Both the position numbers and the translations under genes were made by a program. DNA of 64,000 nt from Ylistrum balloti (taxonomy: Eukaryota). This document shows, in pieces, positions 7,601-57,900 of the stretch (positions within the stretch are counted from its first letter, which is position 1; the number at the start of each line of letters is the position of its first letter). The DNA lies in NCBI RefSeq assembly GCF_031769215.1, contig NW_026782452.1, positions 62,001 through 126,000 of the forward strand. Reading direction: 5' to 3'. The notes beneath the pieces are model-generated. The model had not been told where the DNA came from and did not search any database. It worked only from the letters and a program-made list of their open reading frames with translations.

Positions 7601-10600
7601 ACCTTTTCTGATGATATTTCAGATGTTCTTTTACCCTAAATAATCTGATTTTTTATCCCAGCTTGCTTGGTTTGACATTTAATTAGTAAACAGATTAAAA
7701 AAATGTTGAATGACACACGAAAACATATTGTATTATTTAAGTCTGTCAGGGTGTGTCAAAATTCATTTTGTGATCATTGATCTTGTATAGAGTAACATCT
7801 GTAAAATTGGGAATTTTGTTTTCTAGTCTGAAAGTCAGAAGTTCCTCGCTGAAAACAGTGCCTCTGTGTATATCAAAAAAGTAGAAGCAAGAATTAATGA
7901 AGAGGCAGAGAGAGCCACACATTACCTTGACAAATCCACAGAAGAACCTATTGTTAAGGTTACGTATGGAATAATACACAAAGGAACTTCATGTAACAAT
8001 TCAGTATTGATAGGAATTAGGAAATATATATTAAAAAAGAATTATTTGAAAAATAGGGAATACTCTTATAAACATTTGTCCTTCAGTGATAAAACATATT
8101 AAAGGTGATTGAGAAGTGTCTTTTTACAGTGAAGTTAAAACATAACATGATGCTTTCATTATAGAGAAATCCACTTATCTTGTAGTTTCCCTTCATTATG
8201 ATGAGAGGATGTTAAAGGGTAATTAAGTCTTACAAATTTGAATGCTAAGAAATGAAATGAAAGGTTTTCGATGATAATGAAATATCTTGAATCTGGTGTC
8301 TGTTTTGGCAGTCATTTCTTTATGAAGATACAACACAGCAACATAATATAACAGAGAAAGATTAACAATGAGGTTTGTATTTACAGGTTTTAGAAGAAGA
8401 ATTGATCAGCAAACACATGAAGACAATAGTTGAGGTTTGTGTTTTTTTTGTTTTGGCATTTGTTAAGAGTACATTGACGTACATTATCAAATCAATGTGA
8501 CCTACATTGATGTATAAATTAAATTTCTAAAATAAATGTTATACATAACATTTCAAAAATTAATATTGTAACTTCTGGAGAAAAAACATGCAAAGATATT
8601 GAGTTTCATCTGGATAAAGGCATTATCTGAAAAAAGCAAATCTTGATTAGATTTGCAAATGAGTGTGATGATACGTTTGATCCTTTGGAATGACTTACTT
8701 ATACATGATTTTAATATTATAATGGATTATTTTCAGATGGAGAATTCCGGAGTGGTCAACATGCTAAAGAATAACAAAACAGATGGTAAGAAAACCTTGC
8801 AAAAAAAGCAAAGCAACTGGAGGTTTATTGACTTCTGTCAATATTTTTGTGTCTGGTATTCTGCTTGAAGAAATATGTTTGTGAAAACTAATAAACCATG
8901 CTCAACATGTTCTTTTGTCATTTTGAGCTTGAGTAAGTTTTTGAAGAACCTGGATTGAATTTTTATCAAGATATTTTTCCTATTACTGACTTCCAACATG
9001 GTTCACATTTTCGCAGTTCACCAAAAGCTTGATGCAAAATAGTTTTTTTTTCACAAAAGACACAACAGTATCTTTCTTTGACGATTTTGTTTCCTCCAAA
9101 CTAGAAATAACAAATTTTATTTATATCATATAAAAGGACCACATTTTCATTTTAGATTAGGTGTCACATTTCACTATGTGTACATAGTCTAATTTGGCTT
9201 TTTTACAGATTTGGCATGTATGTACAAACTTTTCATCCGTGTGCCAGAGGGTCTGAAGACCATGTGTGACTGTATCAGTGTATACCTGCGAGAGCAAGGC
9301 AAAGCCATCGTCTCAGAGGAGGGAGAGGATGGCAAAAATGCCATCACCTATATACAGGCAAGAACTTTACAGCTGGAACTTAATCCAGGGATGTAGGCCA
9401 ATAGATTCAAATTGGCTTTTATATAAAAGGTTTCCTTCTTTAGACCAAGATGTTATGGAATGAAATTCTCTTTATAGATGAAAATGGAAACTTGACCCAC
9501 CCCAAGCGCAATTGTTAAGGGTCAAATATAAATTGAAATCATAAATTTCCACAGGGGATTTGTTTTTATTAAATTTGCAGATCCTCAAAATCTGCAGCTT
9601 GATATATCAATGAAATAAATCATCGAAGTTTGATTGTATATAATTTGTGTATATAATATGCATTCCATTGTCGATGGTAATAAATTAATGTATTGCTTTG
9701 TATTTCAACAGAGTCTTCTAGACCTGAAGGACAGATTTGACCACTTTCTACATGAGTCTTACAGTAGTGACAAACAGTTTAAACAGATGATCTCCAAGGA
9801 TTTTGAATACTTTATTAACATCAACCACAAGTCCCCAGAATATCTGTCACTATTTATAGATGACAAACTTAAGAAGGGTGTCAAGGGGGTGAGTGTTTAC
9901 GGTAGATACAGAGTCTTAGATTAGTGGTAACAGTAAGACAGTCAGGGGGTGAGTGTTTACAGTAGGCACAGAGTCTTAGATTAGTGGTAACAGTAAGACA
10001 GTCAGGGGGTGAGTGTTTACAGTAGGCACAGAGTCTTAGATTAGTGGTAACAGTAAGACAGTCAGGGGGTGAGTGTTTACAGTAGATACAGAGTCTTAGA
10101 TTAGTGGTAACAGTAAGACTGTCAGGGGGTGAGTGTTTACAGTAGGCACAGAGTCTTAGATTAGTGGTAACAGTAAGACAGTCAGGGGGTGAGTGTTTAC
10201 AGTAGGCACAGAGTCTTAGATTAGTGGTAACAGTAAGACAGTCAGGGGGTGAGTGTTTACAGTAGGCACAGAGTCTTAGATTAGTGGTAACAGTAAGACA
10301 GTCAGGGGGTGAGTGTTTACAGTAGGTAGAGTCTTAGATTAGTGGTAACAGTAAGACTGTCAGGGGGTGAGTGTTTACAGTAGGCACAGAGTCTTAGATT
10401 GGTGATAACAGTAAGACAGTCAGGGGGTGAGTGTTTACAGTAGGTAGAGTCTTAGATTAGTGGTAACAGTAAGACAGTCAGGGGGTGAGTGTTTACAGTA
10501 GGCACAGAGTCTTAGATTAGTGGTAACAGTAAGACAGTCAGGGGGTGAGTGTTTACAGTAGGCACAGAGTCTTAGATTAGTGGTAACAGTAAGACAGTCA

Positions 10601-54900: not shown

Positions 54901-57900
54901 CAAGGACACCGCAGTATACTGTAAGTCAACTTGGCTGTTTGGGTCTGGTGAGTGAGAAATCATTCACACAGAAATATCAGACTGTACCGTATTAGGAAAC
55001 AATTATATCTGATTTTAGGACAGGCCTACAGTTATAATATTTCATAGATCTAGACTGTACCTGTGTAAGTCGGGCAAACATTTGTAGATCTGACTCATAT
55101 CCATGCCATCAGCTCCCTGCCAACCTTGGCTGGTAAACCTGCAATCACAAGACGTTAGTAGGACTGCAGTTCAAATTATTACTATCTTTAATCACTTTTG
55201 TTCAAAACTACCTCCTGGTCACAAATAGCAAACTAGAGTTTCTGTGTGACATATTTTTAGGGTTTTTGCAGGCAAATAATTGGCCCATTTCCAATTGAAG
55301 TTCTTCAAATTAAAGCAAAATTACTAAAATATGAAATCCTGAAAATTTCCATCCAAAGAAAGTAACAAAAAGGTCTTATCCAAAACCAGTGAAGAAAAAA
55401 CATGGGTTACTATGACGATCTGACTTACCTCTGTTTCTGGGAGTCCATGCTGGAACATGCCTCCACTCCCATAAGGACTGACTTACCTCTGTTTCTGGGA
55501 GTCCATGCTGGAACATGCCTCCACACCCATAAGGACCGACTTACCTCTGTTTCTGGGAGTCCATGCTGGAACATGCCTCCACACCCATAAGGACTGACTT
55601 ACCTCTGTTTCTGGAAGTCCATGCTGGAACATGCCTCCACACCCATAAGGACTGACTTACCTCTGTTTCTGGGAGTCCATGCTGGAACATGCCTCCACAC
55701 CCATAAGGACCGACTTACCTCTGTTTCTGGAAGTCCATGCTGGAACAGGCCTCCACACCCATAAGGACCGACTTACCTCTGTTTCTGGAAGTCCATGCTG
55801 GAACAGGCCTCCACAACCATAAGGACTGACTTACCTCTGTTTCTGGGAGTCCATGCTAGAACATGCCTCCACACCCATAAGGACCGACTTACCTCTGTTT
55901 CTGGGAGTCCATGCTGGAACATGCCTCCACACCCATAAGGACTGACTTACCTCTGTTTCTGGGAGTCCATGCTGGAACATGCCTCCACACCCATAAGGAC
56001 CGACTTACCTCTGTTTCTGGGAGTCCATGCTGGAACATGCCTCCACACCCATAAGGACCGACTTACCTCTGTTTCTGGGAGTCCATGCTGGAACATGCCT
56101 CCACACCCATAAGGACTGACTTACCTCTGTTTCTGGGAGTCCATGCTGGAACATGCCTCCACACCCATAAGAACACAGTCTCTGGTCTTGAGATTATCTA
56201 TCATCACCTGGCCAAAACGATCTGTCATGTTTACCTAGGAAGATAGTTATGAAATTAATACCAGAGGAGTATAGTCTTATGAAACACTGTTGATTCAAGT
56301 CTGAAACATACACCATAGAGGTATAGACCTGTGAAACACTCTTGGAGTCTGAAATGTATATCAAAAGTTTACATATGCTTCTATAATGGTAATTTTTGTG
56401 TTATCACTGCACTAATTTGGCAAAATGTGATTTGGCCCTAAAATCTGACTGCACCAAATAAAGAACATTTAAATCATTATTTTCTTGAGTTTTCCTTTTA
56501 GTTAAAGGCTTGTTTGCTGGTAATCAGATTTTTTACATGATTTATTAATTATCTAAGGTACAATGACATTCCTTTTTCCTTTACATAAATGTAACACTGT
56601 TTCAGGTTTTGTGTCTTCTAAATACAATTAATTCATAATTCACATTATCTATTTCCTCAAAAGCTGGAAAATTGGAAGCCGTATGGAAATACGGTATATA
56701 TTATGACAATACTATCTACCTCTGCTGTCCAGAAAACATGAGACATTTGAACTACTGTAAAAGCAATAACCTTTGTGGGTTTTTTATTTTCACAGAATAC
56801 ATGGCTGCTCTTAATTTAAAATAAAAATTTAAAAGAAAGTTGTGGTACACAAAAAATTAATCAATTTTACAGTATTTCGTAATTCATTACAACACTCACC
56901 TGTTCATAATTAAGGAACAAAGTCACTGGGAATGTGTCAGCAATCCACTTTAGGACTTTGTTGGTGCTATCTGTGTCGACATAGACAAGGACACATTCCG
57001 TCACAAACAAAGTGGGGAGGGAGGTGTCTATGCCACACTCTGTTACTTTTCCTTTCACTTCCTCAAGATGGCGTAGATTAGCCGACACGAGGTGATAATC
57101 TGTTGCATGGATCTCTGTCTTGCTTATCTTGACCTCTCCATCTACATAACACAAACATTGCTGTTGAAGCCATTAATTTCATGATCAGTTAAAATATCTG
57201 TGATAAATATCATACTGCTTGAAAAAAAAACTAACCTGCAGGTGATACACTATACCAACATTACAGGATACAGCAGAGATCTTATAATGTAATGATTCCT
57301 TTTTCACTGTTTGTATAAAAATGTTGCTTTATGATTCGTCAGATTTTTTCTTTTCATTTCTTGATGAAAAAAAAAATCCAGCTTTGACCACTTGATATTG
57401 ATTGGATGAGTCCAGGTCAACACACTATCTTGTAGGTCACAAATCCTTTTTCTTCACCAATGGAATTATGTTAACTTTCTGCTGTGCATGGACATGTGTT
57501 GTGTTATTTCACATTCATTCAGCTTGCAATTTTGTTATTCTTTCACATCAGCATGAAACTAATATACGTTGCTACCAAAGCATAATAAAAAAATATTGCA
57601 CAGTCACTAGTTAGGAAAAATTCAAAATAGAACATTCAGTTGTGAACATCACCACATAATGATTGATGAAAGCAGATGTGAAAAGTGCTGTATTGTTAAA
57701 TCATAACCTCAATTCTATGAATTATGTTCTCCATTCTTCTTTATATCAGTATGAATTTTTTTAATCATATCAAAAGTATTTCCAATCCCAAATATTAATT
57801 GTTTCCTATTTTGAAATATTTTCAAGAACATATTTCATCCCTGAAAATTTGTTTAATTTGTTCAGTGTAAATGCAAACATAAATATCTAATATGCCCCTA

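What the first reader, a model, noticed from the sequence alone, without database searches (positions are those of the whole stretch)
9880..56171. Recurrent class of tandem repeats that amplify 5' splice donors, in three unrelated housekeeping genes
Seen in sequence: four arrays with unrelated sequences and unit lengths each begin across an exon/intron junction and copy exon tail plus donor. They are CUL3 exon 10 (60 bp, about 57 copies), CUL3 exon 15 (50 bp, 6-8 copies), RBMX2 exon 2 (33 bp, 16 copies) and LCMT1 exon 4 (58 bp, 13 copies). That is 4 of the 41 complete coding introns I could define, with none crossing an acceptor. In all four only the first donor gives the intact protein, and any later donor introduces a stop immediately or within 12 codons. 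Established: tandem duplication of AG|GT segments is a proposed route to intron gain, and U1 snRNP binding at donor-like sites affects premature polyadenylation. Inference: either donors are hotspots for duplication or expansion (co-transcriptional pausing, R-loops, microhomology repair), or the arrays persist as U1 decoys and unproductive-splicing/NMD rheostats whose copy number tunes expression. Simple tolerance would allow acceptor-crossing arrays as well, so the donor-only bias needs explaining. I do not know a named repeat class with this property.
Basis: partly seen in the sequence, partly recalled or inferred. Interest (0 to 1): 0.92.

Follow-up and report, generated by a model that had tools for sequence, protein, structure and literature searches.

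The report
Tandem repeats seeded on splice junctions
Four young repeat arrays in three scallop housekeeping genes really do copy an exon end plus its splice donor up to 57 times, but related scallops carry the same kind of array on splice acceptors, so this looks like a tolerated by-product of frequent small duplications at exon borders, not a donor-specific device.

Summary
Four unrelated arrays (60 bp x57, 50 bp x7, 33 bp x16, 58 bp x13) start inside CUL3 exon 10, CUL3 exon 15, RBMX2 exon 2 and LCMT1 exon 4, and every copy carries the donor. Only the first donor keeps the reading frame.

The window matches the Ylistrum balloti assembly. CUL3 introns 10 and 15 have no such arrays in Pecten, Mizuhopecten or Argopecten, so these two arrays are lineage-specific.

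The donor-only claim fails. I verified five acceptor-crossing arrays and two more donor-crossing arrays in the same genes of those relatives. The window itself holds a weak acceptor duplicate in its GPR180-like gene. Earlier unchecked notes of this scan report both donor and acceptor arrays elsewhere in this genome, so the scan has seen this before.

In the relatives, 7 of 20 intragenic arrays cross a junction, against 8-14% expected (P about 0.0006-0.015). That suggests real enrichment at exon borders of both kinds.

Best reading: tolerated minisatellites born from short tandem duplications across splice junctions. A junction-linked mutational bias remains possible. There is no evidence for a regulatory or U1-decoy role. 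RNA evidence for first-donor use is only suggestive.

The parts
9712..9888 (+). CUL3 coding exon 10; ends ...KKGVKG, donor GGG|GTGAGT at 9889
   Evidence: Exact chaining of protein P0365 on the window; sequence read
9884..13281 (+). 60-bp array, 57 copies, each with GTGAGT. The unit is 5 nt of exon tail plus 55 nt of intron head. It fills 3.4 kb of the 3648-nt intron 10 and shows higher-order structure (58- and 57-nt variants, repeated blocks of copies)
   Evidence: TRF; copy listing; donor counts and per-column variation
13537..13707 (+). CUL3 exon 11 ([12 protein letters not shown]...), joined in frame to exon 10 only from the first donor
16893..17010 (+). CUL3 coding exon 15; donor TAG|GTAGGT at 17011
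16966..17357 (+). 50-bp array of about 7 copies plus one degenerate copy. The unit is 45 nt of exon tail plus GTAGG. Two interleaved variants exist, one identical to the exon and one with an in-frame TAA. TAGG microhomology lies at the unit borders
   Evidence: TRF
17375..18735 (+). 37-bp array x36.8 in the same intron, not exon-derived. It ends 65 nt before the exon-16 acceptor. The unit holds a weak donor-like CAG|GTTAAT
18801..18869 (+). CUL3 exon 16
27501..27659 (+). RBMX2 exon 2 (...LTEGDVICVFS, then Q split across the intron); donor ACA|GTAAGT
27654..28167 (+). 33-bp array x15.6 at 98% identity. The unit is 6 nt of exon tail plus 27 nt of intron. DNA contigs of other samples contain both of its borders
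28742..28871 (+). RBMX2 exon 3 (YGEVVNVNLVRDK..., RRM). An RNA contig joins it to exon 4 and runs 49 nt further upstream
56125..56234 (-).
55420..56171 (-). 58-bp array x13 at 97% identity. The unit is 47 nt of exon tail plus 11 nt of intron. All 13 copies keep GAG|GTAAGT
55060..55135 (-). Next LCMT1 exon (approximate limits), ...[23 protein letters not shown]...
   Evidence: conserved block 55057-55161
52118..52762 (-). 23-bp array x28 in the following LCMT1 intron. It stops 29 nt before the acceptor of the exon that starts at 52088 and does not cross it
40176..40240 (-). Weak 28-bp x2.3 repeat that duplicates the acceptor TTACAG plus exon start TTGT.GA of a GPR180-like exon. The exon-proximal copy is the real acceptor by homology with Mizuhopecten
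32641..33223 (+). 14/28-bp array with about 40 GGTAAGT motifs downstream of the RBMX2 stop codon. It is not next to a coding exon, is covered by RNA contigs, and has one extra unit in another sample

Best explanation
These arrays are young, lineage-specific minisatellites.

Proposed origin. A short tandem duplication of 33-60 bp, with 2-4 nt of microhomology at its borders, happened to straddle an exon/intron border. Unequal exchange or replication slippage then raised the copy number. This is inferred from interleaved variants and higher-order blocks of copies.

Why they survive. The first copy is still joined to the intact exon body, so splicing from the first donor yields the unchanged mRNA. 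All later copies simply become intron. They are therefore tolerated, although each later donor would give a stop codon if used.

How general this is. The same thing happens at acceptors, where the last, exon-proximal site is the real one. It occurs in several scallop genera, so it is not a donor-specific class.

Consequence and function. The main effect shown is intron growth: CUL3 intron 10 is 3648 nt here against 357-897 nt in relatives. No function is required.

Shown: the anatomy, local origin, absence from orthologous CUL3 introns, existence of acceptor counterparts, and presence of the RBMX2 array in other individuals. Inferred: the duplication mechanism, use of the first donor in vivo, and neutrality.
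For: - Anatomy and local origin. The units contain their own exon tails of 5, 45, 6 and 47 nt.
- First donor needed. The annotated protein is reproduced exactly only with the first donors, and later donors hit stops.
- Lineage-specific. CUL3 intron 10 is 3648 nt here against 897, 357 and 646 nt in relatives. Intron 15 is 1790 nt against 421, 947 and 934 nt. No homologous array exists in the relatives.
- Other genes show turnover too. Pecten LCMT1 intron 4 holds a different 68-mer array that ends about 100 nt after the donor. Pecten RBMX2 holds a 40-mer x60 array in intron 1 instead of intron 2.
- Young. Copies are 95-98% alike.
- Unequal exchange. Interleaved variants and repeated blocks of copies are visible.
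- Acceptor counterparts were verified in relatives and weakly in the window. Further donor cases were verified in Pecten CUL3 e7 and Mizuhopecten GPR180.
- Microhomology. TTG and T(T)GA lie at the borders of the newborn 41x2 and 33x2 duplicates, and TAGG at the borders of the CUL3 e15 unit.
- Real DNA. Independent contigs X1 and X5 cross both borders of the RBMX2 array.
- Short introns. The median is about 450-550 nt once arrays are collapsed, so a 35-60-bp unit hits a junction 8-19% of the time by geometry alone.
Against: Junction-crossing arrays are still commoner than geometry predicts. Relatives show 7 of 20 against 8-14% expected (P 6e-4 to 0.015). All loci together show 11 of 27. Tolerance plus uniform birth does not explain this fully.

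Mammalian in-vitro work, recalled from memory, suggests that among identical occupied donors the one nearest the acceptor tends to win. On that basis, harmlessness of 57 perfect decoys is not self-evident, and it was not shown here.

RNA support for first-donor use is one contig with ambiguous placement. Copy-number polymorphism of the four arrays was not measured.
Confidence: 0.52

Rival explanations
1. Junction-linked mutational bias. Some process tied to exon borders preferentially seeds short tandem duplications there. Candidates are polymerase pausing or R-loops at splice sites colliding with replication, nicks at nucleosome edges, or microhomology repair. The arrays then grow neutrally. 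On this view exon borders of both kinds are hotspots, and the arrays mark a mutational process that drives intron growth in scallops.
For: Crossing arrays are about 3-4 times commoner than uniform placement predicts in loci that did not trigger the finding (7 of 20). In CUL3 of the relatives alone the figure is 3 of 8 against 0.59 expected, P = 0.016.

Newborn two-copy duplicates (Pecten 41x2 at 100% identity on a donor, 33x2 at 97% on an acceptor) already sit on junctions. This points to bias at birth rather than slow survivorship.

Several interior arrays lie close to a splice signal: 12 and 49 nt after a donor, and 29, about 33 and 65 nt before an acceptor. One further array overlaps the tract just before an acceptor.

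Many unchecked notes from other windows of this genome describe the same thing.
Against: The sample is small: four genes, with orthologous introns reused across species. The null depends on how intron length is weighted; at 18% expected, P rises to 0.05. No molecular signature ties the breakpoints to the splice consensus itself. Unit borders fall 5-47 nt into the exon and 5-55 nt into the intron, with no fixed register. A scan for donor-like motifs in non-junction arrays was not significant after multiple testing.
Confidence: 0.32
2. Selected function. The repeated donors act as U1 snRNP decoys or as an unproductive-splicing/NMD rheostat whose copy number tunes expression of housekeeping genes.
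For: All copies keep strong intact donors (57, 16 and 13). Every downstream donor would yield a premature stop, as an NMD switch would need. One of the hosts, RBMX2, is itself a splicing factor.
Against: There is no conservation. The arrays are absent from the orthologous CUL3 introns of three genera, and the one LCMT1 intron compared holds a different array.

Intact donors are what 95-98% overall identity predicts, because most other columns are invariant too.

Stops after a donor are expected by chance, since GTAAGT and GTGAGT contain TAA or TGA.

Equivalent arrays on acceptors and in intron interiors argue against a donor-specific device.

No RNA contig lay on the interior of the RBMX2 array.
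Confidence: 0.07
3. Assembly artefact. The arrays are mis-assembled or inflated by the long-read assembler.
For: Tandem arrays are error-prone in assemblies. Only one public assembly of this species was seen.
Against: For RBMX2, contigs from other samples under two organism labels contain the exon-to-array and array-to-intron borders, and they carry variant copies. Similar arrays occur in three independently assembled scallop genomes. Copy numbers were not verified.
Confidence: 0.03
4. Dispersed satellite or transposon cargo. The arrays were delivered by mobile elements that carry internal tandem repeats, as described for oyster Helentrons.
For: Bivalve genomes hold such elements (PMC7492417, abstract seen). 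The interior 37-mer here and a Pecten 40-mer share motifs (CAATTAGAG, CAGGT.AA.CAAT) and could belong to one family. A 155-162-bp array recurs in or near LCMT1 in three genera.
Against: The four arrays in question contain their own host exon tails, up to 47 nt, in register with the exon. They therefore arose in place. Their units are unrelated to each other.
Confidence: 0.03

Closest known systems
Intron gain by tandem genomic duplication of an AG|GT segment (Rogers model; Hellsten et al. 2011; Gao and Lynch 2009, as reviewed in PMC3443670 and PMC2891723)
   Same: A short tandem duplication copies a splice-site-like AG|GT. The spliceosome then removes the extra copy, so the coding sequence is unchanged. 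NMD can buffer mis-splicing.
   Different: There the duplication lies inside an exon and creates a new intron. Here it straddles an existing, ancient junction: the intron positions are shared by four scallop genera. It only lengthens that intron, and it is amplified to tens of copies.
Human introns derived from tandem arrays (Zhuo, Madden, Elela, Chabot, PNAS 2007)
   Same: Tandem repeats whose units carry splice sites, giving rows of potential sites inside genes.
   Different: I could not read the paper; it is not held, and I know it only from its title and citations. From memory, those arrays supply both intron borders and are alternatively spliced. Here only one kind of site is repeated per array, and the conserved protein needs the exon-proximal one.
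Intronic minisatellites / VNTRs
   Same: Head-to-tail units of 10-100 bp with high identity, higher-order variants and lineage specificity. Evidence of copy-number change between individuals was seen for the 14-mer array.
   Different: Ordinary minisatellites are not defined by their position. These begin inside an exon and repeat a functional splice signal.
Decoy or cryptic splice sites and U1 telescripting
   Same: Many consensus U1 binding sites lie in an intron close to the authentic donor.
   Different: Known decoys are single, diverged and often conserved. These are identical copies of the authentic site, are not conserved, and have no shown effect on RNA.
Tandem alternative splice sites (NAGNAG, GYNGYN)
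   Same: Local duplication of a splice site gives adjacent competing sites.
   Different: Those are 3-6 nt apart, in frame and used alternatively. Here the spacing is 33-60 nt, the later sites are out of frame or stop-containing, and they are amplified.

Membership tests
Minisatellite / VNTR | Head-to-tail tandem units of roughly 10-100 bp | tested here: met
   TRF periods of 60, 50, 33 and 58 bp with 95-98% matches; copies listed
Minisatellite / VNTR | Copy number varies among individuals | tested here: inconclusive
   Short-read contigs break inside the arrays. Sequence variants within the RBMX2 array differ between samples, and the neighbouring 14-mer array has one extra unit in X1. Copy numbers of the four arrays were not measurable.
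Intron gain by tandem duplication | The duplication creates a new intron at a position that lacked one | tested here: not met
   All 19 CUL3 intron positions, including introns 10 and 15, are shared by Ylistrum, Pecten, Mizuhopecten and Argopecten. The arrays enlarge old introns.
Intron gain by tandem duplication | Duplicated AG|GT-type motif with short microhomology at the unit borders | tested here: met
   The units carry GGG|GT, TAG|GT, ACA|GT and GAG|GT. TAGG microhomology lies at the e15 unit borders, and TTG and T(T)GA at the newborn Pecten duplicates.
Regulatory decoy-donor / NMD rheostat element | Conserved in position or copy number across related species | tested here: not met
   Absent from the orthologous CUL3 introns of three genera. 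A different array sits in Pecten LCMT1 intron 4. RBMX2 intron 2 of relatives was not obtained.
Regulatory decoy-donor / NMD rheostat element | Downstream donors are used and give NMD substrates; use scales with copy number | not testable with these tools
   No run labelled RNA was found. The two small runs that behave as RNA gave one contig across RBMX2 exons 3-4 with 49 nt upstream, and its placement is ambiguous.
   Five acceptor-crossing arrays in relatives and one weak one in the window. The overall tally is 6 donor to 5 strong acceptor arrays. Fisher test, window against relatives, P = 0.06.
Transposon-borne satellite | The unit is foreign to the locus and dispersed | tested here: not met
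   The units contain 5-47 nt of the host exon tail in register. Rfam finds nothing in the window. Dispersal across the genome was not tested.

The most novel reading that the evidence does not exclude
Scallop germ lines have a mutational process tied to exon borders, both donors and acceptors. It could be transcription- or splicing-coupled fork stalling or nicking. It seeds short tandem duplications there several times more often than elsewhere in introns. These seeds grow into arrays of tens to hundreds of perfect splice sites. That would make them a major driver of intron expansion and a standing supply of alternative splice sites. It would also mean that the spliceosome of these animals reliably ignores dozens of identical decoys in favour of the exon-proximal site.
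Probability: 0.3. Interest if true: 0.8.

Novelty: new variant of a known kind. Interest (0 to 1): 0.56.

Why it matters
If the excess at exon borders holds genome-wide, these arrays mark a mutational bias that has not been described in the papers I could search. They would also show directly how introns grow by kilobases: CUL3 intron 10 is 4 to 10 times the length of its orthologues.

They are also natural experiments in splice-site choice. Essential genes carry up to 57 identical strong donors, or several identical acceptors, next to the real one, and still encode the conserved protein. That would test how far exon definition overrides site strength and proximity.

If the excess does not hold, the finding reduces to ordinary minisatellites in short introns. 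It is then useful mainly as a warning for gene prediction and read mapping in bivalve genomes.

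Tried and rejected
- RNA evidence. A search for RNA runs returned none labelled RNA. The only contig reaching the RBMX2 exon 2/3 join has 49 upstream letters that fit either the exon tail or array units, so I do not count it as proof.
- Donor-like motifs in arrays in general. I tested whether arrays tend to carry such motifs on the sense strand, using a weight matrix built from 54 donors of relatives and shuffled units. The 14-mer (p 0.006), the Pecten 40-mer (0.008) and the 37-mer (0.035) stand out, but not beyond what about 90 tests allow.
- The degenerate CAG|GTAAAT repeat at 49.5-49.8 kb. I predicted it would sit on a donor of the zinc-finger gene. I rejected this because that gene has two coding exons ending at 46.6 kb.
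- Intron 10 alignment across genera. Introns are too diverged beyond the first 40 nt or so. There is only a hint that the 60-mer descends from the ancestral intron head.
- Rfam scan of the window: no match.
- Zhuo 2007 and Gao and Lynch 2009 are not held in the library.
- RBMX2 intron 2 of relatives could not be fetched; the Pecten locus ends at the start of exon 2.

Full report
**What is there**

Tandem Repeats Finder reports eight sizeable arrays in the window. Four are the arrays named in the finding: 9884-13281 (60 bp x56.9), 16966-17304 (50 bp x6.8), 27654-28167 (33 bp x15.6) and 55420-56171 (58 bp x13, gene on the minus strand).

Reading the sequence shows that each starts inside a coding exon and carries the exon's GT donor in every copy.

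**Origin and gene order**

The window matches the Ylistrum balloti assembly GCA_031769215.1. Locus L002, fetched with that species' CUL3 protein, is the window shifted by 600 bases.

Gene order:
- CUL3 (+)
- RBMX2 (+)
- a GPR180/TMEM145-like gene (-)
- a two-exon C2H2 zinc-finger gene (+, P0369)
- LCMT1 (-)

This rests.

**Exon borders**

Chaining the annotated CUL3 protein exactly onto the DNA gives 20 coding exons. Exon 10 is 9712-9888 with donor GGG|GTGAGT. Exon 15 is 16893-17010 with donor TAG|GTAGGT.

The chain closes only through the first donor of each array.

Exon tail held in each unit:

| Array | Exon tail in unit |
|---|---|
| CUL3 exon 10 | 5 nt |
| CUL3 exon 15 | 45 nt |
| RBMX2 exon 2 | 6 nt |
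| LCMT1 exon 4 | 47 nt |

The exons beside the RBMX2 and LCMT1 arrays align to human RBMX2 residues 7-57 and LCMT1 residues 231-266.

Reading through the first donor meets a stop at codon 12, 3, 2 and 2 respectively (and direct reading). The arrays hold 57, 6-7, 16 and 13 intact donor motifs.

**Age and conservation**

I fetched the orthologous CUL3 genes of Pecten maximus, Mizuhopecten yessoensis and Argopecten irradians and chained their own proteins. All 19 intron positions are shared.

| Intron | Ylistrum | Pecten | Mizuhopecten | Argopecten |
|---|---|---|---|---|
| 10 | 3648 nt | 897 | 357 | 646 |
| 15 | 1790 nt | 421 | 947 | 934 |

None of the relatives has the Ylistrum units. With arrays collapsed to one unit, the two Ylistrum introns would be about 315 and 222 nt.

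Other genes show the same turnover:
- Pecten LCMT1 has a different 68-mer array in the matching intron, ending about 100 nt after the donor.
- Pecten RBMX2 has a 40-mer x60 array in intron 1, not intron 2.

The arrays are therefore lineage-specific and turn over quickly. Interleaved variants and repeated blocks of copies point to growth by unequal exchange.

**Is it donor-specific?**

No. In the same genes of the relatives I read five acceptor-crossing arrays. Each repeats the polypyrimidine tract, the AG and the first few exon bases, and the last copy is the real one:
- Pecten CUL3 exon 13 (33 bp x2)
- Mizuhopecten CUL3 exon 14 (35 bp x3.5)
- Pecten GPR180 (33 bp x2.4)
- Mizuhopecten GPR180 (about 38 bp x8)
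- Argopecten LCMT1 last exon (55 bp x3.7). Here the upstream copies have lost the AG.

I also read two more donor-crossing arrays:
- Pecten CUL3 exon 7 (a perfect 41-bp duplicate)
- Mizuhopecten GPR180 (about 12 copies of a 58-60-bp unit ending in ACAG|GTAAGG)

Earlier first-stage notes on other pieces of this genome describe at least eight donor arrays and several acceptor arrays. They are unchecked, but they agree with what I found in the relatives.

The overall tally of strong intragenic arrays is 6 donor-crossing, 5 acceptor-crossing and 16 interior. The window's 4:0 against the relatives' 2:5 gives Fisher P = 0.06.

**More than chance?**

Scallop introns are short, with a median of about 450-550 nt once arrays are collapsed. 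A 35-60-bp unit placed at random among tolerated positions therefore straddles a junction 8-19% of the time.

For this window, 4 donor-crossing arrays among 7 intragenic ones has P about 1e-4 to 1e-3. Across the 759 windows read in this genome, that predicts about 0.06-0.9 such windows by luck. The window alone is not compelling.

The relatives were not chosen for having arrays. There, 7 of 20 arrays cross a junction, giving P = 6e-4 at 8% expected, 0.015 at 14% and 0.05 at 18%. In CUL3 of the relatives alone, 3 of 8 cross against 0.59 expected, P = 0.016.

Several interior arrays also lie close to a splice signal: 12 and 49 nt after a donor, and 29, about 33 and 65 nt before an acceptor. One more overlaps the tract just before an acceptor.

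There is thus a moderate, not decisive, signal that exon borders of both kinds collect tandem duplications.

**Reality of the DNA and RNA evidence**

Contigs from two DNA samples under two organism labels run from RBMX2 exon 2 into the array and from the array into the unique intron. They carry variant copies. That array is therefore not an artefact of this assembly.

Two small runs behave as RNA. One contig joins exon 3 to exon 4 and has 49 more letters upstream, laid in the bin that holds the exon-2 tail. Array units could fit the same bin, so first-donor use is suggested but not shown. No RNA contig lay on the array interior.

The CUL3 and LCMT1 arrays were not checked with reads.

**How it most likely works**

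A short duplication with a few bases of microhomology at its ends straddles a junction. Examples are TAGG at the exon-15 unit, and TTG and T(T)GA at the newborn Pecten duplicates.

The exon-proximal site stays attached to the whole exon and is chosen, so the mRNA is unchanged and the extra copies become intron. Exon definition is my inference for that choice. Unequal exchange then expands the array.

Stops after each later donor need no explanation, because GTAAGT and GTGAGT contain TAA or TGA.

Nothing points to a selected role. There is no conservation. Donor motifs are no better kept than most other columns of the unit. Equivalent arrays sit on acceptors and in intron interiors.

What tolerance does not explain is the apparent excess at junctions. 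A mutational bias tied to exon borders is the live alternative, and I give it about 0.3.

**Comparison with what is known**

The nearest described idea is intron gain by tandem duplication of an AG|GT segment (PMC3443670, PMC2891723). Here no intron is gained: an old one is enlarged. Zhuo et al. 2007 described human introns built from tandem arrays, but I could not read that paper.

My searches found no description of junction-seeded arrays as a class, in bivalves or elsewhere. That is absence in a partial library, not proof of novelty.

**Verdict**

The donor-only framing and the regulatory reading are not supported. The generalised pattern, minisatellites seeded on splice junctions of both kinds in several scallop genera, is worth a proper genome-wide test.

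Noticed in passing
window 19482-20416 (CUL3 intron 17): This is a U12-type AT-AC intron with donor TGA|ATATCCTT and an acceptor ending in AC. The same donor is present in all four scallop CUL3 genes.
   Followed up: partly
window 9357/9358 (CUL3 exon 9 donor): Ylistrum uses a GC donor (CAG|GCAAGA), where Pecten, Mizuhopecten and Argopecten have CAG|GTAAAC.
   Followed up: no
window 32641-33223: A 14/28-bp array holds about 40 consensus GGTAAGT motifs downstream of the RBMX2 stop codon. RNA contigs lie on parts of it up to 33021, so it is probably 3' UTR. One extra 14-nt unit is present in sample X1. This is a row of unspliced donor motifs in a transcribed region.
   Followed up: partly
window 29000-29600 and 32000-32400: An interspersed repeat lies in RBMX2 intron 3, with word depth hundreds to two thousand times the single-copy level. 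Related pieces lie about 2.8 kb downstream. This is probably a very abundant short transposon.
   Followed up: no
window 53891-54687; L008 17369-18370; L010 16818-17470: A 155-162-bp repeat array lies in or just beside the 3' part of LCMT1 in Ylistrum, Pecten and Argopecten. It is either an old array kept in place across genera or a dispersed family.
   Followed up: no
L005 32308-34716 (Pecten RBMX2 intron 1); window 17375-18735: The Pecten 40-mer x60 array and the Ylistrum 37-mer x37 array share motifs (CAATTAGAG, CAGGT.AA.CAAT). They may belong to one scallop satellite family. Both end 33-65 nt before an acceptor.
   Followed up: no
L010 16339-16540 (Argopecten LCMT1, minus strand): In this acceptor-crossing array the three upstream copies read TTGTATAATTG where the real site reads TTGTAG|GATTG. 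The decoy AGs are therefore gone. Other acceptor arrays keep theirs.
   Followed up: partly
L007 28971-29164 (Argopecten, 5 kb downstream of CUL3): A 65-bp x3 array has units that each end in CAG|GTAAGG. It begins right after a promoter-like stretch (CCGGAAGTG). It may be a donor-crossing array on a non-coding first exon. The gene was not identified.
   Followed up: no
The numbers are nearly those of CUL3 intron 10 here (3648 nt, 57 copies). It may be the same locus on another contig, read on the other strand.
   Followed up: no
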